A stretch of DNA of 64,000 bases from Haliotis cracherodii (lineage: Eukaryota): positions 27,094,001-27,158,000 of the forward strand of contig NW_027266267.1 of the NCBI RefSeq assembly GCF_022045235.1. Reading direction: 5' to 3'. Made by a program: the position numbers and the translations under genes. This document shows, one piece after another, positions 1 to 64,000 of the stretch. The first letter of the stretch is position 1. Each line of letters starts with the position of its first letter. The notes under the pieces were generated by a model, which was given only the letters and a program-made list of their open reading frames with translations, searched no databases and was not told the DNA's origin.

Positions 1-169
1 GAGGTGAACTCGTTGTCTATAGATCGCCACTCCCATGTCCACAGGTTCTGGAGATTGTTCACATAAAACTGGTTCCCGATCCTCCCAGTGCATCTGAATG
101 AGATCAGCTGACCACTGTCATAACTGACTCTGTCGGGAGTTGGGAACATCTCTATTTGCTCTGGGTAAG
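1..169 (-). CDS. Ig-receptor gene copy A, coding exon 3 (second Ig domain), truncated by window edge
   Basis: Acceptor ttacag| at 170-171. Reads TYPEQIEMFPTPDRVSYDSGQLISFRCTGRIGNQFYVNNLQNLWTWEWRSIDNEFT, nearly identical to the 360-nt exons at 33946-34305 and 44948-45307. Confidence 0.85.
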
Positions 170-276
170 CTGTAAGGAAAATACAATATATGTGTATATA
201 AAAACAAGAACTATCTTGTTGTCATTTTAGTCTTCCTGGATGGTGGGGATGGGGGTGGGTAGGGTGGATGGGTTAT

Positions 277-286
277 TGTGTGTTTG

Positions 287-343
<57 letters not shown>

Positions 344-358
344 GGGGGGGGGGGGGGA
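277..358. repeat. (GT)n microsatellite followed by poly-G
   Basis: Directly visible. Confidence 0.95.
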
Positions 359-360
359 GT

Positions 361-590
361 CATGGGTCATGGGTCGTCTAAGGCAGAGTTGCATCCCTTG
401 CACCTATAATTGAGGGTTCGAATCCCAGTTCGCCCTGATTATGTTTCTAGGTTTGTCAGTACCATATCTGTGTTCGTGTGTTTTACCAAAGTGGTATCAC
501 TTCGGGCTTTCCTCCCACATTAAGCTGACACGCCACGATATAACTAGAATACTTTGGAAAGCGGCGTTAAACCCAACTCAGTCGTTCTCT
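361..590 (+). mobile_element. tRNA-derived SINE (Leu-like head family), internally deleted copy
   Basis: GTCGTCTAAGG A-box-like and GGTTCGAATCCC B-box; body matches 29827-30102. Present at the same intronic position in copies B (34416) and C (45439), so it predates the duplication. Confidence 0.75.
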
Positions 591-593
591 CAT

Positions 594-845
594 TGCCTCC
601 CATTGTCTACATTCGAGACTGTATGAAGCAGTGCTGTTTGTTTGTTGACGCCCCTGTGTACTGACATGCCCCTGAGACAGACACGGGAGGAGGATGGTCG
701 AAGGTGATGTTTTGGTTGTTGGGATATCGTGTCCAGGAGGTGAACTCGTTGTATATGTCCGTCACTCCCATGTCCACAGGTTCTGGAGATTGTTTTTATC
801 GAACGGGTTTTGAAACCTGCCTGTACATCTGAATGAGATCATCTA
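594..845 (-). pseudogene. Degenerate intronic duplicate of Ig exon 3 (pseudo-exon), copy A
   Basis: Aligns to exon 3 (QNLWTWE, TSWTRYP, LLHTVSN) with indels; its acceptor end is replaced by the minisatellite. Confidence 0.8.
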
Positions 846-2204
846 TACACCTGAATGGACACCTGCCTCTATACCTGAATGAGATCATCTATACACCTGA
901 ATGTACACCTGCCTCTATACCTGAATGAGATCATCTGTACACCTGAATGAGATCATCTGTACACCTGAATGAGATCATCTGTACACCTGAATGTACACCT
1001 GCCTGTACACCTGAAAAAGATCATCTGTAACCTGAACGAGATCATCTGTACACCTGAATGTACACCTGAATGAGATCATCTGTACACCTGAATGTACACT
1101 TGAATGAGATCATCTAGATCTGTACACCTGACTGTACACCTGCCTGTACACCTGAATGACATCATATGTACACCTGAATCTACACCTGCCGGTACACCTG
1201 AATCTACACCTGAATGAGATCATCTGTACAACTAAATGTACACCTGCTTGTACACCTGAAAGAGATCATCTGTACACCTAAATGTACACCTGCCTGTACA
1301 CCTGAAAGAGATCATCTGTACACCTGAATGTACACCTGCCGGTACACCTGAATGAGATCGCCTGTACACCTGAATGGGATCATCTGAACACCTGAATGAT
1401 ATCATCTGTACACCTGAATGTACACCTGAATGAGATCATCTGTACACCTGAATGAGATCACCTGTACACCTGAATAAGATCATCTGTACACCTGAACGAG
1501 ATCATCTGTACACCTGAATGTACACTTGAATGAGATCATCAAGATCTGTACACCTGTATGTACACCTGCCTGTACACCTGAATGATATCATATGTACACC
1601 TGAATCTACACCTGCCAGTACACCTGAATCTACACCTGAATGAGATCATCTGTACACCTGAATGTACATCTGCCTGTACACCTGAAAGAGATCATCTGTA
1701 CACCTGAATGTACACCTGCCGGTACACCTGAATGAGATTGCCTGTACACCTGAATTGGATCATCTGAACACCTGAATGATATCATCTGTACACCTGAATC
1801 TACAGCTAAATGAGCTCATCTGTACACCTGAATGTACACCTGAATGAGATCATCTGTACACCTGAATGTACACCTGAATGAGATCATTTGTACACCTGAA
1901 TGTACACTTGAATGTACACCTGAATGAGATCATCTGTACACCCGAATGTACACTTGAATGAGATCATTTGTAGACCTGAATGTACACCTGAATGAGATCA
2001 GCTGTACACCTGAATATACACCTGAATGAGATCATATGTACACCTGAATGTACACCTGCCTGTACACCTGAATGAGATCATCTGTACACCTGAATGTACA
2101 CCTACCTGTACACCTGAAGGAGATCATCTGTACACCTGATATATCTACACCTGAATGTACACCTGCCTGTACACCTGAATGAGATCATCTGTACACCTGA
2201 ATGA
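816..2204. repeat. Complex minisatellite built from TACACCTGAATGAGATCATCTG / TACACCTGAATG / TACACCTGCCTG units
   Basis: Directly visible 22- and 12-bp units; shorter homologous arrays at about 34936-35310 and 45876-46158. Confidence 0.95.
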
Positions 2205-2350
2205 ACAAGTGAATCTGAACAACTGACCGTCATCCTAACTGATCCTGACGGGAGAAGGGAACATCTCTAAGATGGATAAGGTGAGATATATGATAGTAAC
2301 AATGCATGTGAGCATTCTGGACGATAAGCAGTTTATAAAAGAGGCTATAC

Positions 2351-2734
2351 TTCTAGCTGTGATGTTGGTGGTTGTCTCATCATTTCCAGGTGATCCCGCC
2401 AAGTATTGGGTGGAGCAATAGTATTTAGAAGCAGCATCAGTACATCTCAGATCTGTCAGGGTGAACTGTATACTGCCTGTTGCTCCAGTACTAGAACCTG
2501 AGGTTGTCATCCGCTGTTGTAGGCCTGTGTCCACTACTTGTACTGACGAATCTGTGTTGCCCATTCGTATTATAGGCTGATTAGAACCAGTAGAAGATCT
2601 CTTGCCAATCTCCATGTTAAACACTTGTGTTATTCCAGGTACATCTGGACTACAACTTACAGTCAGCTGAGATGTTGGGTTACTTCCCCCAATAGTTATT
2701 TGTGTTGGTAATGTAGTCAGTCTTGCCCCTGTGA
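2351..2734 (-). CDS. Ig-receptor gene copy A, coding exon 2 (V-like Ig domain)
   Basis: 384 nt, AG/GT flanked, phase 1-1. LTVSC ... QFTLTDLRCTDAASKYYC; includes ORF 2235-2624. Confidence 0.85.
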
Positions 2735-3243
2735 CTGGAACAGAAAGAAAAAACTTGTGTTCATGTCAGTGAGAGATGCACAAGTCGAAAATTCAAAAAA
2801 ATGTCAGGTTATTCTGTCATGTAAAACATCTGATGTGAAACATATATAGCATTGTATTATTAACGCACAGTCAAAGCCCATTCAGAAGCATATGGCTCTT
2901 CTTGTAGTAAATACAGGCTTGCCCCTGTGACTGAGAAAGAAAAAACTTGCATTAGTCGACAATTCAACAACATGTCTGATGTGAAAACAATATAACATTG
3001 TAACTACCACTGTACAGTGGAAGACACTTTAAAAATACATGACTTTTCCTATAGTCACTAATATGTCGCACATTCTAGGCAGCACATGTCACTATTTGAG
3101 GGCCTGCAGTTATAATGGCTGATTCTGCATACCTTGCAAGTACCTTGTTTCAGAACAAGTTGATGTGATGAGAATATGATTTACAGTGAACATTACTAAT
3201 AAGCTGATAACTGTTTATATGCCAGCACCAATTGTGTACTCAC

Positions 3244-3298
3244 TTCCAGGGAGAAAGGTAATGAAAATCAGACGACAAAAGGGATGACAAGGCTTCAT
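3244..3298 (-). CDS. Ig-receptor gene copy A, signal-peptide exon
   Basis: MKPCHPFCRLIFITFLPG then A|GTGAGT donor; 55 nt, same length in all three copies. Confidence 0.75.
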
Positions 3299-4637
3299 GC
3301 TTCTTTCTCCAAAAAGTGAATTCCCGTTCCTGAAACATGTTAAGGAATGTCGGAACAAAAGATTTAATTATACCTTTGGTTTATTTACAGAAATTATCTG
3401 TCGAGCTGATGATAGTTTTAGTTTTAAAAAAGTAACCCCTTCCCTTCCCCCAAAATGAAAACAATCAATCACATCTCGCAATTGACGTTAAACACACCAT
3501 GTCAAAGTGAACAACACTCCCCTGATTGGTGAGATGGAGATTACCCAGGAATGTTTATATGCTGTGGATGATAATTTTTTCAAAGGAGAAGTTTGGTTTT
3601 GGTGGAAACCGAGCTTTTGGCTGATATGAATAACCCAATCTGAACCAATTTTTGTAACACACAGGCGAATCAAAATGTTCTTCAAACGAACTCTGCTTAG
3701 CCTTCATGGAAACAAACCAACGTAAATGTCATCACGCAGCCTATCAACTGGATGTGTTAGTCACCAATCATTACAATTATGGACAGAATCGAGGTTTGCG
3801 TCGATACTGCCGTACGTGCTGTTTTTGATGTATCTGACTTTGTCCATATTAGCATAGATAGTCACCTTTCTTTTAGAACTGTGGATTCAAATGTCACACC
3901 TGTGTCTTGAAAGCTATAACACTTACACCTGTACATGCGAACCCGACCACGGACTTGAATCCCAGTCGAAACGATTTACTTCCTTGTTGATTGTGTTATC
4001 GTGTATATATTTGTCCCAATTCGTTGAAAATTCCTTACCTTATTTTTAATACAAATTATCAAAACTACAGCTTATATTATAATAAAATATTCCCAACTTA
4101 ATCTTATATACCTGTATATCCAAATTCCTGTACATTTAAAATTAGCTACCTTTATTATTCTACTTCTATTTCATTTTTTATTATTTTACTTTCCATATGT
4201 TTTATATGAACTTAATATTACTTGATACATGTTATCCAGGCTTTTTCATGTGACATCCTACTTACATAAACAATAAGCCGTCCAAATTCATACCCATAGG
4301 CACAAAATCAACATGCCCATTGTCCAAACGTAATCCCCTGCTATTTTAATTCTATACCCGTCAACGTCTGCTAGTGAGCGAAGCTCAATCACTGTCAGTG
4401 TCTACCTACCCGTCACCTCTAATTATCCCCCTTAGGCAAAGGATTACCGCAAAGCAAACATTATACCGAATGCATTTTTTTAGAAGTAATCCCCTTATTG
4501 TTAATGTCAACAGTAGATTAGTAAACTTGGGAAATCAGTCAGTCATTACAAGCCTTAGGTCAGAAATTCTTATCCAATCAAAATTGGCGTTACATACTTT
4601 GGACCAATAACAGTAAAGGCGCAGTTCCAGCTCCAAC

Positions 4638-29826: not shown

Positions 29827-30102
29827 GTGAGTGAGTTCGGTTTAACGCCGCTTTTAACAGTATTCCAGTTATACCACAGCGTGTGTGCTTAATGTTGGAG
29901 GAAAGCCCGAAGTGATGCAGGTCTCAGGTGTTTACCACTTCGGTGAAACCCACGAGCACAGGTATGGTGCTGACAAACCTAGAAACATAATCGGGGCGAA
30001 CCGGGATTCGAACCCACAATCATAGGTTTCTGGCGTGCCTAAGGGACGCAACTCTGCACAGCGAATCGCGGCGCCTTAGACGACTGGGCCACCCGTGCCC
30101 CC
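29827..30102 (-). mobile_element. tRNA-derived SINE (Leu-like head), full length
   Basis: Head GGTGGCCCAGTCGTCTAAGGCG...GGTTCGAATCCC, tail GCGGCGTTAAA+(ACTC)n, TSD TTTTATAACGA at 29816-29826 and 30103-30113. Confidence 0.85.
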
Positions 30103-30485: not shown

Positions 30486-33400
30486 TCACATATTCTGGTA
30501 TGTTCGTATCTTCTCATACGTGTTGGGAATGTCCTCAGTTTCTCTCTGAAGGGCATCGTAGTGATTCCTGTCCACCGGAATTTCGTACTCATCGCCTGAA
30601 CATATACAGAAATATATAAAATAAGTACATTATCAATGTCCCTCTGACATATATAACTTTGAGAGAAAAGACAATTTTCATTGAAACACTTGTATCTGAA
30701 TGACATGAGTACGTGAACGTTTGTTTCACAGTCACAGTCAGCGTAATTTCAGGGTTTGACATCAGCCTGTTGATTTAGCCTAAACTAGAACATGCCACCG
30801 GGACAAATTGACAAGATGTCAGCTAATTTATTGAGTCTAGTCAGCAAACCATCTTTCGTCAGCTCTTACACGCAGCACGGACCGCTTGGTGCATGTACAC
30901 CTCTGGAGTCACTATTTAGATTTTCTGTGTTGCACACTTTTATACATTTGATATACGTCGACAAACTCTGACCTTGTGTTTGGAGTTGGACAGGAGATAT
31001 CACTGTGGCGGGAGTCTGTATGCTGTTGTGGTTGAGACAGAATAAATGTTACACGTGCGTGGAGATCAATATACTAGCCAACAAACCAACGACTGTTAAA
31101 AGCTCTTAAGCAAAAAACATTTTGAATTTGTAAAATTCTACTTGTCATTAATATGTTTGTTGAGAAGTTATGAAGTTTTCGAAGAATTATTGCTGGAAAG
31201 ATGAACCTACTTGGACATCACTGATATTTCTGTATTACTGGTTTTCTTGGCACCTGAAACAAGGACATATTTCAATAAATAATTTGAACAAGATAAATAT
31301 CATAATAGATATCAACACTAAATGTATAGTGGATAATGTCATTGATGTGATAATCGGATGAACTTGACAAATGAAATCACAAAGCAGAAACCCCTTTTAA
31401 TATGTCCCATACACCAATACGATGCTAAGTTGCAAAATACATTAATATATATTGTTAGTTTCATTCTATGCATTTGGTCAATTGCTGCATTCAGTGGGAT
31501 ATGATTTAGTGCATGCATTGCATATTTCTGTTGATTTGTTTACATTTTGTAAAAAAACGATCTAACAATCTGAAGTGTTGTTTCATTTTGATATAGATCC
31601 TCCAAAACAGAAGTATGGGTTTAAGGAAGATATTGTTCTGAGGTGAAGGGAATTGATCAGAATAGACATAAACTTTAGACTGATGATGTGATTTACTGAA
31701 TGAAAAGTGGTCTTTCTGCCCAGGTTTTTATACATTGAAAGAGCTTGAACGTGTGTTCATTCCATCCCTTTGTTACTTAATACACTCCAAATACAATAAA
31801 GCACGCAAGAGTGGTATTTGCTGGTACTCTCATGCGAACATTGGACATAAATGGTGAGGCCAAACTTGGCACAAGTGTCACTGTGAACCATGCCAACAAG
31901 ACGACCACACAAAGATCGCATGAAGGCAAAAGAATGACTCCAGGATGGTATATCCATCAGTAATGCAGCAGATGTCCCACTCCTCCATCCTCAGACTATG
32001 GAATAGATTTCGTACAACTGGCAGGTTCAAATGTAAACCATGTAAAAATCTTAGACCAGACAAGGGTATTACCGGCCCTGAAAGTTATTGGGCAAGGAGC
32101 CTTCTTGCATTATATTGTAAGACTTCACAGAGCAGGTGTTGTTACTGCCTTTCTGTAACAAACTGACCAGCTTGCTCGCCTAGTCATGCCTCTATCGAAC
32201 AAGCATAGGACGTCATTGGCGGACACGTGCGTCAGAACCATCGTCAGCCATCAAATCTGCAACAGCCCAACAGTCCAATTCCTCCAAGTAGACTGGCTAG
32301 CCATCCCGAAGACTCTGCGGACATCAGTGCGAGGTCGTTGCTGGGAGTGCATACAGCACATATGTGGTCACACACATTACGCTATCATGCCTTTTAATCA
32401 GTGTGTGTTCATTCCCCGATCCAGGCTCTTACAGCATTTATTCCCTCATTTGATTTCTGTGTAGAAATGATTACACTTGTTCTAAAGAGGACATATGTCA
32501 ACGTCTGTATGGTTTTCGTGGCATCAGCTCGTGAATACAAGATGTCCCTATAATTGTTTAAGAAGGATATGTAAGGAATGGATCCATGGCAGAACCCCAA
32601 TGCTAAGTGGAATGTCTTATAGATGCATGTGGTCAAGTGTTGTATGACGTCATACATCTAAGTTATATGTATATAACGTTAGAAGAACTGTTAAATTTCC
32701 ATCATCCTTTACTCACCCGATATGCAGTTTGCTATTTCGTCCCTGTAGAGGAAAGCCAAACCGAGACAGATGGCATCTACGGCCAGCATCACACAGACAC
32801 CTATAGCAACTCCAACACCAATAACGGATTCCTGGCTGTTTTGTATACATATCGCTGTCATTTGAAATAAAATATGCATTTTTTTAAATATGTAAAGGAT
32901 GTACACAATTTCCATTAAATCTGCACTTTACATTATCTTCAGAAACTATAGCATTGTTGCAGTACAAATTTAACAAAACTAATTTAACCATCAATGGTTC
33001 GTTAAAGCTGACAATACATCAAGGTTTCATTTGTTGTGTACATTCGTACCATGATGACTATGAAATATGTCACGTGGTTGTATAATATCAGAAAATGAGC
33101 AGAAATATATTACCTTGATAATGCCTAATAATTCTGTGGACATACGTGGAGATACGACAAAGAACGAAGAGTATTCTGTACACAGTGATGAAAAGAGAGT
33201 CTTTTCCCAATAAATCGGAAACACAAGCTCCAGGTTTGTTTAAAGTGTAACGTCAAATATGTATATTTGTGTGTAGCACTAATTTAAACATTTCGAGTAG
33301 GAAAGACGTGAGTGTCATGTGAGACCTTCACAGATGTGATCCGTAAGTGATCCGTAAGTGTTCAGATCCGTTTACCACTAATCGTTGCTTTGTTTCACTT

Positions 33401-36388
33401 CAGCAAACCCACCTGTTGTAGACGTTTCGGGACGTGATGTTGGCCCTGGCGGTTGTTGACCTGGAAATCAAGACAAAGTTGTAGTTGTTAGTAAAATAAG
33501 CCTGACCTAAGCCTGAATTGAACTGAACAGGTGAACCTTTTTTTTTTTTTGTTGTCCAGCTAACATGTGTTCAATTTCATAATGTATATGGCGTTACAAA
33601 AAATCACATAGGCCTAATCTAGATACCAGAATGAAATTTCCAACTGCATGATGTACATGGTATAACAGATTAAATATGAGCCTGACCCTGATCCCAAACG
33701 GAAATTACCAAGTGTAATTATGGCCTTGATGTTTAAATGGTTGCTGTCCTGATATTGAAACCTTACAGACATTTGAGTTCAGGTTCAAGATGTACGTGGG
33801 ATAGATGATATAACTGATGTATTTTCCCGACAATTTTAAGCAAAAAATCCGCTAAGCATGAACTTTAAATGCCAGTAGTTTGACTGCTTGATCTGCAAAC
33901 CAAATACGTATAAATGTTGAAGCACTCATGACTATGAAATCTTACCAACAACAAGAACTGTCTTGTTGTCACCGTAGTCTTCATTAATGACTGAACACCT
34001 GAACTGTCTCCCATCGTCTAGATTCGAGACTGTATGAAGCAGTGTTGACGCCCCGTTATACTGGCATGCTCCTGACCCAGGTACGGGAGAAGGAGGGTCG
34101 TAAGTGATGTTTTGGTCGTTTGGATATCGTGTCCAGGAAGTGAACTCGTTGTCTATAGATCGCCACTCCCATGTCCACAGGTTCTGGAGATTGTTCACAT
34201 CAAACTGGTTCCCGATCCTCCCAGTGCATCTGAATGAGATCAGCTGACCATTGTCATAACTGACCCTGTCGGGAGTGGGGAACATCTGTATCTGCTCTGG
34301 GTAAGCTGTAAGATAAATACAATATTATGTCGATGTTCTGGATAATAAGAAATTCATGAAGAAGAATGACAAATACTCGGATAAAGAGTAATATGTTTAT
34401 ATCAAATGTGCAAATGGGGCATGGGTGGCGCAGTCTAAGGCATCTCGATTCCGCTGTGCAGAGTTGCATCCCTTTGGCGCGCCAGAAACCTATGATTGTG
34501 GGTTCGAATCCTGGTTCGCCCCGATTATGTTTCTAGGTTTGTCAGTACCATACCCGTGCTCATGGGTTTTATCAAAGTGTTAAACGCCTAAGACCTGCAT
34601 CACTTCAGGGTTTCCTCAAACCTTAAGCTGACACGCCACGAAATAACTGGAATACTGTGGAAAATTTGCGTTAAACCCAACTCAGTCGTTCTCTCATGAA
34701 TGACAGAACACCTGAACTGTCTCCCATTGTCTAGATTCGAGACTGTATGAAGCAGTGCTGTTTGTTGACGCCCCGTTATACTGACATGCCTCTGAGACAG
34801 ACACGGGAGAAGGATGGTTGTAGGTGATGATTTGGTTGTTGGGATATCGTGTCCAGGAGGTGAACTCATTGTATATGTCCGCCACTCCCATGTCCACAGG
34901 TTCTGGAGAGTTTTTATCGAACTGGTTTAGAAACCTGCCTGTTAACCTCATTGAGATCATCTGTACACTTGAATGTACACCTGCATGTCCACATGAATGA
35001 GATCATCTGTACACCTGAATGAGATCATCTGTACACCTCAATGTAAACCTGCCTGTACACCTGAATGAGATCATCTGTACACCTCAATGTAAACCTGCCT
35101 GTACACATGAATGAGATTATCTGTACACCTGAATGTAATCCTGCCTGTACACCTGAATGAGATCATCTGTACACCTGAATGTACACCTGCCTGTACACCT
35201 GAATGAGATCATCTGTACATCTGAATGTAAACCTGCCTGTACACCTGAATGAGATCATCTGTACACCTGAATGTAAACCTGTCTGTACACCTGCCGGTAC
35301 ACCTAAATGAACAAGTGAACCTGAAGGAATCAACTGACCTTCATCATAACTGATCCTATATATATATCCATGTGATTTTAAATGTGTAGTTCAAATCACT
35401 TAAAAAGAAACAAGACATTTTAGTTTTGGTAAATATAAACATACGCACTTCTAGCTGTGATGTTGGTGGTTGTCTCATCACTTCCAGATGATCCCGCCGT
35501 GTATAGGGTGGAACAATAGTATGTAGAAGCAGCATCTGTACATCTCAGATCTGTCAGGATGAACTGTATGCTGCCTGTTGCTCCAGTAATAGAACCTGAG
35601 GCTGTCATCCGCTGTTGTAGGCTTGTGTCCACTACTTGTACTGACGAATCTCTGATGGTCATTCGTATTATAGCCTGATGAGAACCAGTAGACGATTTCT
35701 GGCCAATCTCCATGTTAAACAGTTGTGTTATCCCAGGTACATCTGGACTACAACTTACAGTCAACTGAGATGTTGGGTTACTTCCCCCAATAGTTATTTG
35801 TGTTGGTGATGTGGTCAGTCTTGCCCCTGTGACTGAGAAAGAAAAGCTTGTGTTTATGTCAGTGAGAGATGCACAAATCGAAAATTCAAAAAAAATGTCG
35901 GGTTATTCTTTCATGTAAAACATATGATGGGAATCATATATAGCATTGTAATTAACAGTCAGAGCCCATTCAGAAGCATATGACTCTTCTTGTAGTGACT
36001 ACAGGCTTGCCCCAGTGACTGAGAAAGAAAACTAGCATAAGTCGACGATTCAACAACATGTCTGATGTGAAAACTATATAACATTGTAACGCACCACTGT
36101 ACAGTAGAAGACCATTCAAAAGCACATGACTCTTCCTGTAGCTACAATATATGTCGCACATTCCAGGCAGCACAGGTCACCATTTGAGGGCCTGCAGTTA
36201 TAATGACTGATTCTGCACACCTTGCAAGTACCTTGTTTCAGAACACATTGATGTGATGAGAATTTGATTCACACTGAACAAAACTAATAAGCTGATATCT
36301 ATGTTTATATGCCAGCACTAATTGTGTACTCACTTCCAGGGAGAAAAATAATGAAAATCTGACAACAAAAAGGATGACAAGGCTTCAT
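30486..36388 (-). CDS. Ig-superfamily type I membrane receptor, copy B (intact, 364 aa)
   Basis: Exons 36334-36388 (signal), 35449-35832 (V-like Ig), 33946-34305 (Ig), 33413-33460 (P/T stalk), 32717-32854 (TM VIGVGVAIGVCVMLAVDAICLGLAFLY) and 30486-30595 (tail DEYEIPVDRNHYDALQRETEDIPNTYEKIRTYQNM*). All introns GT-AG, all phase 1, 1095 nt open. Confidence 0.8.
34416..34690 (+). mobile_element. tRNA-derived SINE (Leu-like head) in intron 2 of copy B
   Basis: Collinear with 29827-30102. Confidence 0.8.
34696..34962 (-). pseudogene. Degenerate intronic duplicate of Ig exon 3, copy B
   Basis: Fragments NEFTSWTRYPN and LLHTVSNLDNGRQFRCSVI lie in different frames (ORFs 34694-34960 and 34600-34869). 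Confidence 0.8.
34936..35310. repeat. TACACCTG-type minisatellite, copy B
   Basis: Same units as 816-2204. Confidence 0.9.
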
Positions 36389-38391: not shown

Positions 38392-41185
38392 TGTCTTGGA
38401 TGAGGAGGATAGAGTATCCGTTCATTTTACCCTGATAAAACTCAAAACCAATCATGATCAAGCCTAATGAGATCTTCGGAGGCAAAACTCAAGATTGATA
38501 AGGCAATCCATGCAATGATGGATACACCTAAGCAGTGTTTTACTTCAGACGACTTTTAACAATTTGATGTTACATTAGAACGTTTTATAAGTACAGGAAT
38601 AAACATTGCCAGTTTTAAGTATTAACCCTACATCTGAGTTCAGTGTCTAGACGGAGAGTCACTCGTCGAAACATACATTCAGCTAAACCAACCCGACAAC
38701 TAAATTCCATCCTAGCGTATTTTCTATCCCTCATCCACAGTTTTAGCCAAAATTACATTTATCCGTGTCAGTAACATCTATTATCTTTAAGAAACCCGGT
38801 TAACTGATTATTTGATATAAACTACCCTTGCCATTCAAACACCACATGAGTTAGAAATTAAATTCATGATCTGTTGTATGGAGGATGTTACAGTATGTAT
38901 TAACTTGTATGCATTTCATCAAGACATATGCCGATAAAAGCATGAGCTTACTGTATGATTTATGGTAATGCAACAAGAAAATAAACAGTGTGAAAACATG
39001 AATAAATTAAAATGTCAAAGACAGATTATTGTTGCAACTGTTTCACTACTTCAGTTGTTTTAATACCTAATATCTGTCTGTACCGATTAAATATTAAATA
39101 TGAATGGTAAATGGTTCATGGTACGTTGAGCTCACATTGGTTCATGAAAACGCATATTTATCTGTACACATTTACACGGTTTCTATTTATTAGGAAAGAT
39201 AAAGTTTACCTCCATCTATAAAGTCGAGATAGCAATATAAATCAAATCTATTGCATAATGGCTACAACACCCTTTCCAGTCCCTATAACTCTCTCTTCTA
39301 AACACTCGCTACAACAAATGTCCGCTATCTACCTTCTTATTTACTTACTACACTACATCAACATTTCCATTTACCTCATTCACTTTCATTCAATATTCGA
39401 ATTGTTTGTCCTCTTTCTCATTTTACAAATTCCACAGGTCAACCAACTGGGCCTAAACACACTGTGTACATGCGGGAGGTAGTTGACGCCATTTTGTCGT
39501 CTTCGTGCACAATTGCTGCAATTTGTCCTATACACAAACGTACGTCATAAGAGAATACCTGAAGGCGTTTATAAATATCTTGACAACGAGAACCAAGTAT
39601 TGGTACTCCGTCACCTTCCGTCACTTTCTCTATTGATCTTAGTAAACCTAAATATCTATTGTTTCACTATATGTAATACCCTCATTACAGTATATGGAGG
39701 TGAACGGTTACAAGTGCGTGAATGTTGTTGTTTTATGCAATATTTGTCACACTGAAGAACGTGTCACTTTTGAAAATCTTATATTCTGGCCAGAATTGTA
39801 CCTTTCACGATTCAACCAAGGATTTTGTTGTCCTTGTAAGCAGCCTCTGAATGTCTTTGTACGAAGCTAACTTGTATATGTATGCATAAATACACTCTGC
39901 TTAAACATAAACACGCAAGTACCAATAATTTTGCTTATGCATTTTTGTTGTCCCATAAAGAAAAGAATAAACATATTAACGTTTGTGAAAGTTTATTTTA
40001 CAATTCAGTGTATTATACAACTGTCAGCATTAATCGCTGTGGTATAGCTGGAATATTGCTAAACGCGGCCTTACTCTTAAGGCACATTGTATGACCCCAA
40101 CTTGAATATGTAAGCACACATACAATGTGTGTGGAGATAAACATGTAAGAACTAAAGTGACCATTGACATTTGTAAACATCTGTGAAAGTGTATTCTGCA
40201 TCAGCATTAATCACAATCAATCACTATCACTGGTGGGAAACATACCCTTTGCCAATGTATTAAGGGTTGGTCTTGTATGGAGTCAGGCACGAAGTATGTG
40301 GACGTATATCACATGCAAAAATTAATAACATTGAACATGAAGGTGTTGCTTAGTCTTTTGTACCTCAACTGACAGCAGATAGTCATTCAAAGATTTGATT
40401 TATGCTTCTGTTATAATTCATGCAGCACTGATACGCCCGTCATATCAGACATTATGACATCAGTATGTTTGTCATTCAAAACAGTTCTGATAACAAAGTA
40501 ACATCTATATTGTTACACCTTACAACGACTCTTACGCTTCCGTAATGTAGGATTAGTAAGTAGATCTGTGTTTCTATTTGATTGCATCTTTGAGGAAGTA
40601 TTGTGTTTTGGTCATATGAATTTTTGTCTACGTCTGAGGAGATGTGCACTTAATTACATTGAACATGAAGGTGTTCCTTATACTATTGTACCTCAAATAC
40701 AAGTGAATGTCCAATCAGAACTAACGTTGACTTTCATGTCTTAGCAATCACCATTGAAATTGCATCCAAATGTGCATCCTTATTTCACATATTCTGGTAT
40801 GTTCGTATCTTCTCATACGTGTTGGGAATGTCAGCAGTCTCAGTCTGAAGGGCATCGTAGTGATTCCTGTTCACAGGAGTTTCGTACTCATCGCCTGCAC
40901 ATATACAGAAATATATATATTAAGCACATTATCAATGTCTCTCTGACATATATAACTTTGAGAGAAAAGACAGTTTTCATTGAAATATGTTCACATACAA
41001 TTATATTTGAATGAAGTGAGTACGTGAACGCTTAACAGTCTCAATCAACATATATTTCTGGGTTTTACATCAGCCTGTTTATTTACCCCTAAATTAGAAC
41101 ATGCCACCGGGACAAGTTGACAAGATGTCAGCTTATTTAGTGAGTCTAATCAGCCAATCATCTTTCGTCAGCTCTTATACCCAGC

Positions 41186-41536
41186 GACCGCCTCCGTGGT
41201 CTAATGGTAGAGCGTCAGCCCGGACAGCGGAAGCTCCGCAGTTCGATCCCCGACCGCGTCATACCAAAAGACGTTAAAAGATGGTACTTGTTGTTACCCT
41301 GTCTGGCGCTCGGCATTAAGGGGCTAAAACAAGAACTGGTCGGCTTGGAGTCAGTAAACTGGGTCTGAGTGGGGTATTCATGTTAAACTGCGACATGGTA
41401 TCTCAGTGAGCTAGCACTATAAATCGGCATCAGTCCCGACTAGTACGAGCATCCACACACACACACACACGTACATGCACGTCGCTATATAAGTGCAATA
41501 ATCTTGGACGCGACGTTAAACCCCATTTCACCTCAC
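41186..41536 (+). mobile_element. tRNA-derived SINE with Meta-like central domain
   Basis: A box TGGTCTAATGG, B box GTTCGATCC, central CATACCAAAAGACGTTAAAAGATGGTAC...GCATTAAGG (Meta assignment from memory), tail CGACGTTAAA+(CACCT)n. TSD CTCTTATACCCAGC at 41172-41185 and 41537-41550; empty site near 30863. Confidence 0.85.
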
Positions 41537-44500
41537 CTCTTATACCCAGCACGGACCGCTTGGTGCATGTACACCTCTGGAGTCACTATTTAGATTTTCT
41601 GCGTTGCACACTTTTATACTTTTGATATACGTTGACAAACTCTGACCTTGTGTTTGGATTTCGACAGGAGAGATCACTGTGGCGGGAGTCTGTATGCTGT
41701 TGTGGTTGAGACAGGATAAATGTTACACGCGCATTGAGATCAATATACTAGCCAACAAACCAACGACATTTTAAAAGCTTTTTTGCAAAAAGACATTTTC
41801 AAATGAAATTCTACATATCATTAATATGTTTATTGAGAAGTTATGAATCTTTCGAAGAATTATTGCTGGAATTATGAACCTACTTGGACATTACTGGCAT
41901 TTCTGTATTACTGGTTTTCTTGACACCTGAAACAAGGATATATTTTAATTAATACTTTGAATAAGATAGATATCACAATAAATGTCAATACTGAATGTAT
42001 AGTGGATAATGTCATTGATGTGATAATCGGATGGACTGAAGTCACAAAGCAGAAACCCTTTAAATATGTCCCACACACCGATACGATGCGAAGTTGCAAC
42101 ATACACTATTCCAATCCTAATGCTTACATGCATATTAAGCACAGTGAGAGCAATATATATTGCTAACTTCATTCTATGCAGTTGTTCAATTGCTGCATTA
42201 CGTGGGATATGATTTAGTGCAGGCATTGCATATTCATGTGGGTTTGTTTACATTTTGTAACCGACCTAACATTCTGAATTGTAGTTTCATTTTGATATAG
42301 ATGCTCCAAAACAGAAGTATGGGAGCTCCCTGTGACTAAGGAAGATATTGTTCCGAGGTGAAAGGAATTGATCAGAATAGACATAAACTTTAGACCGATG
42401 ATGTGATTTATTGAATGAAAAGTGGTCTTTCTGCCCAGGTTTTTATACATTGAAAGAGCGGGAACGTGTGTCCATTCCATCCCTTTGTTACTTAAGACTC
42501 TCGAAATACAAAATAGCACGAGAGAGTGGTCTTTGCTGATACTCTCATGCGAACTTTGGACATAAATGGTGAGGCCAAACTTGGCACAAGTGTCACTGTG
42601 AACCATGCCAACAAGACGACCACACAAAGATCGAGGTGAAGGCAATAGGATGACTCCAGGATGGCATATCCACCAGTAATGCAGCTGATGTCCCACTCCA
42701 TCGTCCTCAGACTATGGAATAGATTTCGTACCACTGGCAGGTTCAAATGTAAACCATGTTAAAATCTTAGACCAGACAATGGTTATCCTTCAGCCTTCAG
42801 GACTTGCAACAGCGCTCCACCACAGTCAGGGCTCTGAGGCTACAACTGGGGGCTGCCACACACACAAAACTCAGTACCGAGACCATAAGGAACAGCATCC
42901 GAGCTGCCAACATGTGGTCACTTGTGTCCTCCATTTCGACCAGTTTATCGAGTCGACCTGGTGCAGATCTCATCTCATGTGGAATGTGCAATAGTTGTCG
43001 CAAGTACTCTCTACTCTCTATCTGCAGTTTAAAATTCATGTTGGGCTCGTGTCCTGAGAGTCCCTCATAAAAAAGATGCCACTCTGTTAGAGAGACCGGT
43101 TATGATCACTTATGATCTAGGGTGGCTTTAGCCATTATAACAGTACTCTCCATACCATGTCAATCTTATCGTTGGATGATACACTCTCCACTCCAGGGTA
43201 TTACCAGCTCTGAAAGTTATTGGGCAAGGTACCTTCTTACAGGACAATGCAAGACTTCACAGAACCGGTGTTGTTACTACCTTTCTGAAACATATTGACC
43301 AGCTTGCTCGCCCGGTCATGCATCTATCGAACAACCATAGGACGTACTTGGCGGACGCGTGCGGCAGTACCATCGTCAGCCATCAAATCTGCAACAGCCC
43401 AACAGTCCAATTCCTCCAAGAAGACTGGCCAGCCATCCCCGAAGACTCTGTGGACATCAGTGCGACGTCGTTGCTGGGAGTGCATGCAGCACAGATGTGG
43501 CCACACACATTACGCTATCTGACCATGTAACTCTTTGCCTTATGACCAGTGTGTGTTCATTCCCTGCATCAAGGCTCTTATAGTATTTAATCCCTCATTT
43601 GACAGTTTGTATGCAGAAATGATTGTGCTTGTTCTAAAGAGGACACATGCCAACGTTTTTACGTCTGTATGGTTTTCGTGGCATCAGCTCGTGAATACAA
43701 GATGTCCACATACTTGTTTGAGAAGGATATGTAAGGAATGGATCCTTGGCAGAACCCCAATGCTAAGTTGATCGTCTTATGGATGCATGTGTAATGGTCA
43801 AGTGTTGTATGACGTCATACATCTAAGTTATATGTATATAACGTTAGAAGAACTGTTAAATTTCCACCATCTTTTACTCACCCGATATGCAGTTTGCTAT
43901 TTCGTCCCTGTATAGGAAAGCCAAACCCAGACAGATGGCATCCACGACCAGCATCACACAGACACCTATAGCAACTCCAACACCAATAGCGGATTCCTGG
44001 CTGTTTTGTATACATATCGCTGTCATTTGAAATAAAATATGCATTTTTTTTAAATATGTAAAGGATGTACACAATTTCCATTAAATCTACAATTTACAAT
44101 ATTTTTCACAAACCATAGCATTGTTGCAATACAAATTTAACTGAACAAATTTAATCATCAGGAGTTCGTTAAAGCTGACAATACCTCAAGATTTTCTTAT
44201 TTGGATGTTTCATTTGTTGTGTACATTGGTACCATGGCGACAATGAAATATGTTGTATAATATCAGAAAATGAGCAGAAATATATCACCTTGATAATGCC
44301 TGATAATTCTGTGGAGATACGACAAAGAACGAAGAGTATTCTGTACACAGTGATGAAAAGAGAGTCTTTCCCCAATAAATCGGAAGCAAAAGCTCCCTGT
44401 ATGTTTAAAATGTAACATCAAATACGTATATTTGTGTGTAGCACTAATTTAAACATTTCGAGTAGGAAAGACGTGAGTGTCATGTGAGAATTTCACAGAT

Positions 44501-56650: not shown

Positions 56651-57819
56651 TGCACTGTGGGTCGGGGAATGTTGGATGTTGGTGGGTAGGATGTCGGACA
56701 CCCCTTCACCCAGAACCACTCGGTTGACAGGGACCCGGTAACACCAATCCATTTACACACCGCCAGTGATAACAGCCCGTGCCGGAAGAAATGCTCACTC
56801 TCAACACACAATGAGGAAACATGCATCTCATTAACCAGCATTACCTCATTGTCATAATAGCCATATAATGTATCGTAATGTGAATACATCTAAAACCAAA
56901 TGGACAATAAATCATGTACAATTGGACACATCGTGACTTGGAATACTTCCTTCTTCAAACGCGACCCCACAATCCTCGGAGACCCGGATTAAAATTGGTC
57001 TACGGCAACCTGTGGGTGTCGTACGTGAGTGAGTATGGTTTTACTTCGCTTTTAGTAGTACTCCAACAATGACCTCTTGTGGGGAATCGAACTACGTGAT
57101 GAGCGAACGCTTTAACCACCAGGTTACCCCACCGCGACTATACTAGTCGTAAGATACGACTAACAGGGTTGGTTGGTCAGACTCGCTACCTTCGTTGCGC
57201 AGATCGATGCTCATGTCTGTTCGTAATGATCACCTGACCTTAGATTTAAAACAAATGCACGTGATACCTCGAAATTGGCTCCAATAGCCTCATTGACAAC
57301 AATTCAAATTGTAACCGTTTTTCATTACATGATTCAGTATTTGACGATATCAATACCCTTCCTATGTCATGTGTACCAATTTCGGCTGTATTTCTCTATC
57401 AAGCATCGGTGCTTTTTTTATTTTATGATGTGATGATGTTGTGGCTAACATAACGATCGTCGCACCTTTATATATTAAGTAAGCGTTGATGTATGTACAT
57501 TACGACGGGCATAGTGATAAACAAGATTCGAAACAGATCCTGCAGTAGAGGGACACGACTCTGTCCAAGGTGGACGCTCTGTCAGTGTAGACTAGCATGC
57601 CACCTATCTCTTTAATCACCTGTTTTATAACAATGGTGCTGATACTAATAGTGTCATTCCTGCATCCCAAGTATGAAGCTGTCCGAATCCCATACTCGGT
57701 GCCTCCTGATGTCATGGTGCAGATAAAAAATGCCTGGGTTTTCCGACACTGTCCTCGGGTGTCATGGCGCAGATCAGCAGCATGCACAGATTTTCAACCA
57801 CAAACTCGTGGTGCCATGG

Positions 57820-63800: not shown

Positions 63801-64000
63801 GTGTCATAGCGCAGATAAGGAGAGTTCCTTGGTTTTCCACTTCAGCCGTCCTTGTGTCTTAGCGCAGATAAGGAGAGTTCCTGGGTTTTCCACTACAGCT
63901 GTCCTTGTGTCACAGCGCAGATAAGGAGAGTTCCTGGGTTTTCCACTACAGCTGTCCTTGTGTCTGAGCGCAGATAAGGAGAGATCCTTGGTTTTCCACT
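57820..64000. repeat. 53-bp tandem satellite, about 116 copies, continues past the window end
   Basis: Unit GCAGATAAGGAGAGTTCCTGGGTTTTCCACTACAGCCGTCCTTGTGTCATAGC. Confidence 0.97.

What the first reader, a model, noticed from the sequence alone, without database searches (positions are those of the whole stretch)
30486..36388. Tandem family of two-Ig receptors with an intramembrane Asp, an ITAM-like pair and a terminal YxNM motif
Seen after splicing (invisible in the ORF track): the TM is GVCVMLAVDAICLGLAFLY, and the last exon encodes YEIP, YDAL-x10-YEKI and YQNM-stop; copy C conserves all four tyrosines. Known: YxxL/I pairs recruit Syk-family tandem SH2 domains, YxNM (CD28 YMNM, DAP10 YINM) binds PI3K p85 and Grb2, and TM acidic residues mediate assembly of DAP10/DAP12/CD3-type complexes. 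Clustered Ig genes with ITAM-like tails include the Hydractinia Alr allorecognition genes. Inference: an activating immune or allorecognition receptor cluster in a probable mollusc, combining receptor and adaptor features in one chain.
Basis: partly seen in the sequence, partly recalled or inferred. Interest (0 to 1): 0.8.

Follow-up and report, generated by a model that had tools for sequence, protein, structure and literature searches.

The report
Abalone activating-type paired Ig receptor
This is a real, spliced black-abalone gene for a two-immunoglobulin-domain surface receptor with an aspartate in its membrane span and a conserved tyrosine signalling tail. It looks like the "activating" arm of a snail-wide family whose other arm carries classic inhibitory motifs, the design of vertebrate paired immune receptors.

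Summary
Window 30486-36388 (minus strand) is an intact gene of Haliotis cracherodii with 8 exons, not 6, encoding 395 aa. The parts are a signal peptide, a V-set Ig domain, a second Ig-like domain, a Pro/Thr stalk, a TM with Asp309, and a tail with YEIP, YDAL-x10-YEKI and YQNM-stop. Spliced RNA contigs show five of the seven junctions. A RefSeq model (P0116, "uncharacterized protein") is identical exon by exon.

The ITAM-like tyrosine pair is invariant in ten family tails from Haliotis, Babylonia and Littorina. In each genus it occurs together with a TM Asp, although two Haliotis subtypes lack the Asp. In YQNM only YxN is conserved; the Met is not.

The new point is that the same ectodomain (78-87% identical in abalone, 86% in Babylonia) also occurs on chains with an uncharged TM and an ITIM+ITSM tail (LHYADL...TEYASI). 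Each tail type is old and conserved across gastropods. That is the signature of paired activating and inhibitory receptors.

An immune role, Syk/Grb2 binding and the function of the Asp remain inferred. Allorecognition is unsupported. The scan has noted other abalone Ig-receptor clusters with tyrosine tails on this chromosome (s1-834033, s1-826198); they lie at different loci.

The parts
36334..36388 (-). Exon 1 of copy B: start codon and signal peptide MKPCHPFCCQIFIIFLPG, ending in phase 1, with a GTGAGT donor.
   Evidence: Identical to the N-terminus of RefSeq model P0116. Copies A and C have the same exon at 3298 and 47151.
35449..35832 (-). Exon 2, phase 1-1: membrane-distal V-set Ig domain (Ig1). 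It has the LTVSC...DAASTYYC cysteine pair.
   Evidence: The AlphaFold model has pLDDT 95, and all listed Foldseek PDB hits (50 rows) are antibody VH or nanobody domains. PDB phmmer gives a weak match to light-chain V domains. The junction to exon 3 (34305|35449) is seen in all 4 runs. dN/dS between copies is about 1-1.4, with changes clustered at residues 36-62.
34693..35340 (-). Inside intron 2: a 46-bp minisatellite derived from the 5' part of exon 3, and a degenerate, frame-broken copy of exon 3 (34963-34693). A tRNA-derived SINE lies just downstream at about 34420-34660.
   Evidence: tblastn of the Ig2 exon against the window and the sequence itself. The depth spike at 34426-34819 is typical of a high-copy repeat. 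The same arrangement is present in copies A (593-2270) and C (45641-46228).
33946..34305 (-). Exon 3, phase 1-1: second Ig-like domain (Ig2). It carries the FRCTG...WTWEWR...RQFRC motifs and a third invariant Cys.
   Evidence: Alignment of 12 paralogues. The AlphaFold model has pLDDT 81, and the Foldseek PDB hits are Ig domains (IL-18R beta, Roughest D1-D2, VL). The junction 33458/60|33944/46 is seen in 3 runs.
33413..33460 (-). Exon 4, phase 1-1: Pro/Thr/Ser-rich stalk GQQPPGPTSRPETSTT.
   Evidence: A junction to exon 3 was seen. The stalk is present in P0116.
32717..32854 (-). Exon 5, phase 1-1: transmembrane segment IGVGVAIGVCVMLAVDAICLGLAFLY followed by RDEIANCIS. The Asp is Asp309 of P0116, codon 32777-32775.
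   Evidence: The junction 31250/53|32714/17 to exon 6 is seen in 2 runs. The exon is 100% identical in copy A and 96% identical in copy C. The Asp is kept in H. asinina, Babylonia and Littorina relatives.
31211..31253 (-).
   Evidence: Junctions 31250|32714 and 31022|31211 in RNA contigs. Present in P0116 and P0002.
30973..31022 (-).
   Evidence: Junctions 31022|31211 and 30594|30972. Present in P0116.
30486..30595 (-). Exon 8: tail DEYEIPVDRNHYDALQRETEDIPNTYEKIRTYQNM plus the stop codon. Tyrosine codons in window coordinates, with P0116 numbering: Tyr363 at 30587-30585, Tyr372 at 30560-30558, Tyr386 at 30518-30516, Tyr392 at 30500-30498.
   Evidence: The junction to exon 7 was seen. Conservation of the tail is shown.
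40785..47151 (-). Copy C. Exon 1 is at 47151-47098. Ig1 is at 46587-46258 and is truncated at its 3' end, with no donor site. Ig2 is at 45314-44946. The TM exon with Asp is at 44023-43880. The tail (YETP, YDAL-x10-YEKI, YQNM) is at 40898-40788.
   Evidence: The partial RefSeq model P0002 (XP_071094760.1) starts in the pseudo-exon.
1..3298 (-). Copy A, 5' part. Exon 1 is at 3298-3245, Ig1 at 2732-2352, and the start of Ig2 at 176-3. The rest lies left of the window.
   Evidence: The continuation is in L024: a stalk, a TM exon identical to B's, and exons 6 and 7, but no tail exon was found.

Best explanation
Copy B (RefSeq P0116, 395 aa) is a type I membrane receptor of black abalone. It has a variable V-set Ig domain that most likely binds ligand, a second Ig-like domain, a short O-glycosylation-type stalk, a TM helix with a buried Asp, and a disordered tail of about 77 residues.

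I read it as the activating-type arm of a gastropod-wide paired-receptor family. On ligand-driven clustering, a Src-type kinase would phosphorylate the tail tyrosines. The doubly phosphorylated YDAL-x10-YEKI pair would then dock a tandem-SH2 kinase of the Syk type. pYQN would dock a Grb2-type adaptor, and pYEIP a Crk/Nck-type (pYxxP) adaptor.

Sister chains carry almost the same ectodomain but have an uncharged TM and an ITIM+ITSM tail. These would recruit the SHP-2-like phosphatase and oppose the signal. A third form has three Ig1-Ig2 units plus an FN3 domain and no signalling tail, and could act as a decoy or co-receptor.

Shown here: gene structure, splicing, the folds, motif conservation, the split between shared ectodomains and different tails, and an SHP-2-like gene in the genome. 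Inferred: phosphorylation, which SH2 proteins bind, opposite signalling, an immune role, and what the TM Asp does. My best guess for the Asp is assembly with another membrane protein or control of surface expression.
For: - Gene model: all eight exons have GT-AG borders, and the Ig, stalk and TM exons are all phase 1-1, as is typical of IgSF genes. Five of the seven junctions appear in spliced contigs. RefSeq P0116 is identical exon by exon.
- Folds: Ig1 is V-set (pLDDT 95). Ig2 is Ig-like. The Babylonia homologue passes the Pfam V-set threshold.
- Tail conservation: both tyrosines of the YxxL/YxxI pair are invariant in the ten family tails aligned (and in the 17.5 Mb cluster tail added to the alignment). 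The spacer is 9-13 residues. These include H. asinina P0006 and P0011, Babylonia P0077 and Littorina P0115.
- TM Asp: it is present in the same chains in all three genera. It is the only charged TM residue type in the family, apart from one His, one Glu and a boundary Arg in unrelated or edge segments. It never occurs in the ITIM/ITSM forms.
- Paired signature:
  - The Babylonia ITAM-like and ITIM/ITSM chains are 86% identical over 270 ectodomain residues, while their TM and tail regions show no significant similarity.
  - B's Ig2 is 87% and Ig1 78% identical to the H. cracherodii ITIM/ITSM form P0105.
  - Across lineages the ectodomains are only about 28% identical, yet each tail type is still recognisable. 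The inhibitory tails of Haliotis and Babylonia match at E 1e-9, and of Haliotis and Lottia at 7e-9. The activating TM plus tail of Haliotis and Babylonia match at 2e-4.
- Selection: Ig1 has dN/dS of about 1-1.4, against 0.3-0.4 for Ig2 and 0.2 for the TM exon. Ig1 changes cluster at residues 36-62.
- Readers of the motifs: the genome holds an SHP-2-like tandem-SH2 phosphatase. SYK is annotated in abalone transcriptomes (PMC8428104).
- Precedent: the ITAM of oyster CgIgR binds CgSyk (PMC6994640).
Against: - There is no functional or tissue-expression data. The runs are coded, and their contigs are 90-99% alike, so they may derive from paralogues or sister species.
- The spacer of 10 residues exceeds the strict ITAM range of x6-8.
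- The TM Asp is absent from the A' and H. rufescens P0117 subtype and from the 32.9 Mb paralogue, which keep the tail. The Asp and the tail are therefore separable.
- I did not locate a Syk gene in this genome. The tandem SH2 exons I checked belong to a Csk-like gene.
- YxxL/I motifs also serve as AP-2 sorting signals.
- The dN/dS values rest on few substitutions (Fisher p 0.08), and the variable region was defined after looking at the data.
Confidence: 0.6

Rival explanations
1. It is a signalling subunit rather than a stand-alone receptor. Like CD3 or CD79 chains, which combine an Ig ectodomain, an acidic TM residue and their own ITAM, it would use the TM Asp to assemble with a separate ligand-binding chain that carries a basic TM residue.
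For: The combination of Ig domains, a TM Asp and an ITAM-like tail in one chain recurs in three gastropod genera. In vertebrates, acidic TM residues sit on the signalling chains (established knowledge of CD3, DAP12 and FcR gamma assembly).
Against: No member among the 117 family proteins fetched has a Lys or Arg inside its TM. The membrane-distal V-set domain evolves fast, as a ligand binder would. Two Haliotis subtypes drop the Asp but keep the tail.
Confidence: 0.15
2. It is an adhesion or trafficking IgSF protein, in the nervous system or epithelia for example. Its YxxL/I and YxxP motifs would be endocytic or sorting signals, not immunoreceptor motifs.
For: YxxPhi is the AP-2 sorting consensus (established knowledge). 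No tissue data are available. Many invertebrate IgSF proteins are adhesion molecules (PMC11999971, listed).
Against: A sorting signal needs only one YxxPhi. It does not explain the conserved pair with a 9-13-residue spacer, the conserved acidic context, or the terminal YxN. It also does not explain sister chains with a textbook ITIM+ITSM pair on the same ectodomain.
Confidence: 0.12
3. It is an allorecognition or gamete-recognition locus, in which polymorphic Ig1 domains mediate self/non-self or sperm-egg discrimination, as in Hydractinia Alr.
For: The genes form a tandem cluster. Ig1 has dN/dS near or above 1 with clustered changes. Alr genes are clustered IgSF genes with ITAM/ITIM-like tails (bioRxiv 10.1101/2022.03.04.482883, listed).
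Against: Abalones are solitary, not colonial. No homology to Alr was found: all the profile hits whose source was looked up are molluscs. Allelic polymorphism was not measured. The family is conserved as activating and inhibitory pairs across distant gastropods, which fits immune-type regulation better.
Confidence: 0.08
4. Copy B is an unexpressed or decaying duplicate, and only other family members are functional.
For: Neighbouring copies are damaged. Copy C's Ig1 exon is truncated, and no tail exon was found for copy A. The laid contigs differ from B by 1-10%.
Against: B has an intact 395-codon frame, eight canonical splice-site pairs, and constraint on Ig2 and the TM exon (dN/dS 0.2-0.4). 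It also has a full-length RefSeq model.
Confidence: 0.05

Closest known systems
Vertebrate paired receptors with an ITAM-like motif in the activating chain itself: CEACAM1 (ITIM/ITSM) with CEACAM3 (ITAM-like), and Fc gamma RIIB with Fc gamma RIIA
   Same: Near-identical Ig ectodomains sit on two kinds of chain. One has an ITIM+ITSM tail. The other has a non-canonical ITAM-like pair in its own tail. The genes are clustered and the distal domain evolves fast (PMC5112662 abstract).
   Different: No sequence kinship was detected, so the family appears to be restricted to molluscs. The activating chain also carries a TM Asp and a terminal YxN motif. Opposite signalling is not shown.
Oyster CgIgR (Crassostrea gigas; PMC6994640)
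   Same: A mollusc IgSF type I receptor with an ITAM in its own tail (DYTEL-x8-YEKL), shown to bind CgSyk and activate ERK in hemocytes. The second half-motif, YEKL, resembles YEKI here.
   Different: CgIgR has five Ig domains. The word 'transmembrane' does not occur in the paper's main text, and no charged TM residue is mentioned in the passages read. No paired ITIM partner is described. I did not compare the sequences directly. The ITAM-like arm found here is known only from gastropods.
CD3 epsilon/gamma/delta and CD79a/b signalling chains
   Same: An Ig ectodomain, an acidic or polar TM residue and an ITAM in the same polypeptide.
   Different: Those are obligate subunits of multi-chain receptors with an invariant ectodomain. 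Here the distal domain is variable, no basic-TM partner is known, and there is no sequence homology (no Pfam hit).
DAP10 and CD28 YxNM motif
   Same: Copies B and C, and H. rufescens P0117, end in YQNM. That fits both the pYxN (Grb2) and pYxxM (p85) consensus. DAP10 also has a TM Asp.
   Different: The Met is not conserved: the motif is YQNV or YQNL in orthologues and paralogues. There is no homology to DAP10. The only Pfam DAP10 hit is a sub-threshold TM match in Lottia P0029.
Siglecs (V-set plus C2-set domains, ITIM/ITIM-like tails, paired members such as Siglec-5 and Siglec-14)
   Same: The language-model neighbours of P0116 are Siglec and CD22-like clusters (score 0.92). The architecture, a V-set domain followed by an Ig domain with tyrosine tails and paired forms, is similar.
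   Different: This is only a lead. There is no alignment or E-value, the sialic-acid-binding Arg was not examined, and there is no Pfam match.

Membership tests
Immunoglobulin superfamily, V-set domain (Ig1) | A beta-sandwich with the B-F strand disulfide and C'/C'' strands, with structural similarity to V domains. | tested here: met
   The AlphaFold model has pLDDT 95 and nine strands. All listed Foldseek PDB hits (50 rows) are VH or nanobody domains (E 8.5e-9 to 1.5e-7). C27 and C106 are invariant and the DxAxYYC motif is present. Pfam V-set does not reach threshold for this protein, but it does for the Babylonia homologue P0077.
Immunoglobulin superfamily (Ig2) | An Ig-like beta-sandwich with a B-F cysteine pair and the C-strand Trp. 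| tested here: met
   C26, W43/W45 and C103 are invariant in 12 paralogues. The model has pLDDT 81, and the Foldseek hits are Ig domains with TM about 0.6. There is no Pfam hit.
ITAM | Two YxxL/I motifs separated by 6-8 residues (strict definition) or 6-12 residues (extended definition, as used in PMC6994640). | tested here: inconclusive
   YDAL-x10-YEKI fails the strict spacing but meets the extended one. The spacer is 9 in Littorina, 10 in Haliotis and Babylonia, and 13 in one paralogue.
ITAM | The doubly phosphorylated motif binds the tandem SH2 domains of a Syk-family kinase. | not testable with these tools
   This needs biochemistry. I did not locate a Syk gene in this genome. SYK is annotated in abalone transcriptomes (PMC8428104).
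Paired activating/inhibitory receptors | Highly similar ectodomains combined with different TM and cytoplasmic regions. | tested here: met
   In Babylonia, P0077 and P0085 are 86% identical over 270 ectodomain residues, while their TM and tail regions show no significant similarity. In H. cracherodii, B's Ig2 is 87% and Ig1 78% identical to P0105.
Paired activating/inhibitory receptors | The inhibitory member carries an ITIM (and often an ITSM). The activating member carries a charged TM residue and/or an ITAM. | tested here: met
   LHYADL plus TEYASI/V, with an uncharged TM, occurs in P0105, P0029, P0019, P0085 and P0086. A TM Asp plus an ITAM-like pair occurs in P0116, P0002, P0006, P0011, P0077 and P0115.
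Paired activating/inhibitory receptors | Shared ligand and opposite signalling output. | not testable with these tools
   This needs ligand identification and signalling assays.
DAP10/DAP12/CD3-type TM assembly | An intramembrane acidic residue that pairs with a basic TM residue of a partner chain. | tested here: inconclusive
   The Asp is present and is conserved in three genera. No family member with a Lys or Arg in its TM was found. Partners outside the family were not searched. Two subtypes lack the Asp.
YxNM motif (CD28, DAP10) | A conserved Tyr-x-Asn-Met serving both the Grb2 and p85 SH2 domains. | tested here: not met
   YQNM occurs only in B, C and H. rufescens P0117. The motif is YQNV in H. 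asinina, A' and the 32.9 Mb paralogue, and YQNL in the 29.2 Mb paralogue. It is lost in the 27.5 Mb paralogue. Only YxN is conserved.
Hydractinia Alr allorecognition family | Sequence homology of the ectodomain to Alr genes, and a role in allorecognition. | tested here: not met
   A profile search of 1.84 billion representatives gave 99 hits. All those whose source was looked up are molluscs. The allorecognition role was not testable.

The most novel reading that the evidence does not exclude
Gastropods have a modular, multi-chain immunoreceptor system that arose independently of the vertebrate one. In this reading the TM-Asp/ITAM-like chains are CD3- or CD79-like signalling subunits. They would assemble through the intramembrane Asp with as yet unidentified ligand-binding chains, and their output would be balanced by ITIM/ITSM-tailed twins that share the same variable V-set head.
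Probability: 0.15. Interest if true: 0.85.

Novelty: new variant of a known kind. Interest (0 to 1): 0.62.

Why it matters
Paired activating and inhibitory Ig receptors are a hallmark of vertebrate innate and NK-type immunity. In the literature I could search, no such pair is described for gastropods. The mollusc precedent is a single oyster ITAM receptor (PMC6994640).

This family offers a clean, testable invertebrate case. The same fast-evolving V-set head sits on two ancient tails of opposite type. The design is conserved from abalone to whelks and periwinkles, and it adds an intramembrane Asp on the activating side.

It gives concrete reagents for asking whether ITAM/ITIM balancing predates vertebrates or arose by convergence: tail phosphopeptides, an Asp309 mutant, and Ig1-Ig2 Fc fusions. 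It also gives candidate immune genes for the black abalone.

Tried and rejected
- Pfam on each exon and on P0116 gave no family.
- PDB sequence search gave only weak V-domain hits for Ig1 (E 0.006) and nothing useful for Ig2.
- Looking for a Syk gene through SH2 hits in the genome was not conclusive. The best tandem pair, at C1:59.02 Mb, is Csk-like, and the pair on C15 is SHP-2-like. Syk was not located, which says nothing about whether it is absent.
- I looked for a family member with a basic TM residue as an assembly partner and found none.
- I compared the exons with the 17.5 Mb Ig cluster noted earlier (s1-834033). The Ig exons do not match, and the tail exon resembles ours only weakly (E 0.1).
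- Allorecognition and Alr kinship were rejected for lack of any homology.
The full-length protein used is the database entry P0116, returned.

Full report
**What is there**

The window is G000:C4:27094001-27158000 of a 1.18 Gb genome. Exact-sequence look-up of proteins encoded here names it Haliotis cracherodii, the black abalone.

On the minus strand between 36388 and 30486 lies an intact gene. I rebuilt it from open frames, splice-site contexts and laid sequencing runs. It has eight exons, all with GT-AG borders, and 1188 coding nt including the stop, giving 395 aa.

| Exon | Coordinates | Content |
|---|---|---|
| e1 | 36388-36334 | signal peptide |
| e2 | 35832-35449 | Ig1 |
| e3 | 34305-33946 | Ig2 |
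| e4 | 33460-33413 | stalk GQQPPGPTSRPETSTT |
| e5 | 32854-32717 | TM ...GVGVAIGVCVMLAVDAICLGLAFLY RDE... |
| e6 | 31253-31211 | cytoplasmic |
| e7 | 31022-30973 | cytoplasmic |
| e8 | 30595-30486 | DEYEIPVDRNHYDALQRETEDIPNTYEKIRTYQNM-stop |

Exons 2-5 are all phase 1-1, the usual IgSF exon design.

The four runs I laid are recorded only as "RNA?". Their contigs, however, skip exactly these introns with CT..AC ends, which is GT..AG on the minus strand:
- 34305|35449, seen in all four runs
- 33458|33944, seen in three runs
- 31250|32714, seen in two runs
- 31022|31211, seen in one run
- 30594|30972, seen in one run

So the contigs are spliced cDNA.

A word search with a Haliotis asinina homologue later returned the RefSeq protein P0116 (395 aa, H. 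cracherodii, "uncharacterized protein"). It is identical to my model exon by exon. I never joined my own exons for any search. P0116 was used by its id.

One limit applies. The contigs are 90-99% alike, so they may come from paralogues or sister species. Expression of copy B itself is not proven, and the e1|e2 junction was not among the joints listed.

**The domains**

Pfam recognises none of the exons. AlphaFold models built on alignments of family members are confident.
- Ig1 has pLDDT 95. All listed Foldseek PDB hits (50 rows) are VH or nanobody domains, so it is a V-set domain.
- Ig2 has pLDDT 81 and matches Ig domains such as IL-18R beta, Roughest D1-D2 and VL.
- Ig2 has an invariant Cys26/Trp43/Trp45/Cys103 core plus a third invariant Cys.

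**The local family**

The window holds three copies and a fourth lies just to the left.
- A' (left of the window) is complete. Its TM lacks the Asp (GVGVMLVVIIICLSLTFKY) and its tail ends in YQNV.
- A has a TM exon identical to B's, but I found no tail exon for it.
- B is intact.
- C keeps the TM Asp and all four tyrosines. Its Ig1 exon has lost its 3' end and its donor site. Its RefSeq model P0002 therefore starts in a pseudo-exon.

Every copy carries the same features in intron 2: a 46-bp minisatellite and a decayed duplicate of the Ig2 exon.

Elsewhere on the chromosome the tail exon recurs at 27.52, 29.20 and 32.89 Mb. Ig2-type exons recur at about ten further sites. These include a gene with three Ig1-Ig2 units plus an FN3 domain (P0001; the FN3 passes Pfam). 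That explains the contigs that join the end of Ig2 to the start of Ig1.

**Are the motifs conserved?**

Yes for the core, partly for the rest.

A profile of 12 Ig2 exons was searched against 1.84 billion representatives. It found only 99 proteins at E<=1e-3. Those I looked up are gastropods (Haliotis, Lottia, Patella, Gigantopelta, Babylonia, Crepidula, Littorina, Nucella) plus one pearl oyster.

In an alignment of ten family tails, plus the one tail from the 17.5 Mb cluster, both tyrosines of the YxxL...YxxI/L pair are invariant:
- Haliotis: YD[AVNY]L or YEAL, then x10 or x13, then YE[KEQ][ILM]
- Babylonia: YDSL-x10-YSEI
- Littorina: YDGL-x9-YQDL

The first motif is kept as Y-x-x-P in most Haliotis tails and in Babylonia (DDYMEP). 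It is lost in H. asinina P0011 and in the 29.2 Mb paralogue. The last tyrosine is kept as YQN in most Haliotis tails, but the fourth residue varies among M, V and L. The conserved feature is therefore YxN (Grb2-type), not YxNM.

The TM Asp is present in B, C, A, the 29.2 Mb paralogue, H. asinina P0006 and P0011, Babylonia P0077, and Littorina P0115, P0061 and P0064. It sits 8-11 residues from the cytoplasmic end of the helix. It is absent from A', from H. rufescens P0117 and from the 32.9 Mb paralogue, all of which keep the tail.

The Asp is common but not obligatory.

**The main new point: paired receptors**

Other family members carry an uncharged, Ile/Val-rich TM and a tail ending in LHYADL...TEYASI(R/K)LF, which is a textbook ITIM plus ITSM. 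They are:
- H. cracherodii P0105 (a gene at 36.36 Mb)
- Lottia P0029
- Gigantopelta P0019
- Babylonia P0085
- Crepidula P0086

Within a species the two kinds of chain share the ectodomain.
- Babylonia P0077 (Asp, ITAM-like) and P0085 (ITIM/ITSM) are 86% identical over 270 residues. Their TM and tail regions show no significant similarity.
- Copy B's Ig2 is 87% and its Ig1 78% identical to P0105.

Between Haliotis and Babylonia the ectodomains are only about 28% identical. Each tail type nevertheless remains recognisable:
- inhibitory tail, Haliotis against Babylonia: E 1e-9
- inhibitory tail, Haliotis against Lottia: E 7e-9
- activating TM plus tail, Haliotis against Babylonia: E 2e-4
- activating TM plus tail, Babylonia against Littorina: E 4e-4

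Old, distinct tails combined with ectodomains that stay alike within a lineage is the pattern of vertebrate paired receptors.

Between copies, Ig1 has dN/dS of about 1.0-1.4, against 0.3-0.4 for Ig2 and 0.2 for the TM exon. Ig1 changes concentrate at residues 36-62, with a further group near 107-115 in several comparisons. On the model's strand order I read these as the C-C' strands with the C'-C'' loop, and the F-G loop. The counts are small (Fisher p 0.08) and the region was chosen after looking, so this is only suggestive of a variable binding face.

**Mechanism**

I commit to the following, at about 0.6. Copy B is an activating-type receptor.
- Ligand-driven clustering leads to tyrosine phosphorylation of its tail.
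- The YDAL-x10-YEKI pair recruits a Syk-type tandem-SH2 kinase.
- pYQN recruits a Grb2-type adaptor.
- pYEIP recruits a pYxxP-class adaptor (Crk, Nck or Abl type, from the established SH2 specificity classes).
- The ITIM/ITSM twins recruit the SHP-2-like phosphatase and oppose the signal.

The genome supports part of this. It encodes an SHP-2-like tandem-SH2 phosphatase at C15:9.886-9.910 Mb. I did not locate Syk, because the tandem SH2 exons I tested are Csk-like. SYK is, however, annotated in abalone transcriptomes (PMC8428104). In the oyster, the ITAM of CgIgR binds CgSyk (PMC6994640).

The role of the Asp is the least certain step. No family member has a basic TM residue. A partner outside the family, homo-oligomerisation, or control of surface expression all remain open.

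**Comparison with known systems**

- The nearest functional analogues are paired receptors whose activating chain carries its own ITAM-like motif, such as CEACAM1 with CEACAM3 and Fc gamma RIIB with Fc gamma RIIA.
- The nearest taxonomic precedent is oyster CgIgR.
- The combination of Ig domains, an acidic TM residue and an ITAM resembles CD3 and CD79 chains.
- None of these shows sequence kinship with this family.
- Language-model neighbours are Siglec and CD22-like clusters. This is a lead only.
- Literature searches found no description of paired ITAM/ITIM Ig receptors in gastropods.
- Earlier notes from this scan describe other abalone Ig-receptor clusters with tyrosine tails on the same chromosome (s1-834033, s1-826198) and a lectin-headed "one head, two tails" pair (s1-844815). 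Black abalone therefore has many such systems.
- The tail exon of the 17.5 Mb cluster (GDEGETSTYEGM...TYEAIRASPYQN) resembles ours weakly (E 0.1). Its Ig exons do not.

**Verdict**

Novelty is a new variant of a known kind. Interest is about 0.6, mainly for the conserved paired architecture across gastropods and the unexplained intramembrane Asp.

Noticed in passing
window 53479-55130 (+), within 52559-55133: The head-to-head neighbour of copy C looks like a transmembrane adaptor. It has a TM with a Glu (IVASLECGVLVTIIVLLLY) and a last exon rich in tyrosine motifs (YTEI, YSSI, YIDM, YSDV, YENI, YINE). It is already noted as s1-844835. I only read the open frames.
   Followed up: partly
window 34693-35340, 593-2270 and 45641-46228: Intron 2 of every copy holds a 46-bp minisatellite derived from the start of the Ig2 exon (repeated QMISFRCTGR-like frames) and a frame-broken duplicate of that exon. 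RefSeq model P0002 of copy C starts inside the pseudo-exon.
   Followed up: partly
window 30000-30100 and 34420-34660: tRNA-derived SINE copies are present. The one in intron 2 draws enormous contig depth in all four runs.
   Followed up: no
window 46150-46260: Copy C's Ig1 exon loses its last 17 or so codons and its splice donor. It runs into sequence related to the start of the Ig2 pseudo-exon, so copy C probably cannot make a two-Ig protein.
   Followed up: yes
L024 (G000:C4:27086001-27094000) 1844-4236: Copy A has a TM exon identical to B's, and exons 6 and 7, but I found no tail exon before the next gene (A') begins. The interval contains repeat-like ORFs.
   Followed up: partly
   Followed up: no
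window 55900-56900 (-) and 57500-64000: A long proline-rich repetitive open frame lies on the minus strand (repeated ...RPSVPAYTPDPQYRPTPPTLSTGLHP...). It is followed by a GC-richer tandem-repeat block whose frames repeat (WKTQELSLSALCHKDGCSGKPRNSPYLRYDTRTAVVENPGTLLICA...).
   Followed up: no
G000:C15:9886001-9912000 (L030-L032) and G000:C1:59019001-59032000 (L027-L028): There is an SHP-2-like gene with two SH2 domains followed by a tyrosine-phosphatase domain. There is also a Csk-like kinase gene that seems to have two SH2 exons 3.8 kb apart. The second exon matches the CSK SH2 at E 3e-33.
   Followed up: partly
P0105, P0104, P0003 and P0103 (gene at G000:C4:36.36 Mb): The RefSeq isoforms of the inhibitory-type gene differ in their tails. 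Only isoform X3 (P0105) carries the ITIM+ITSM end, so alternative splicing may switch the inhibitory motifs on or off.
   Followed up: no
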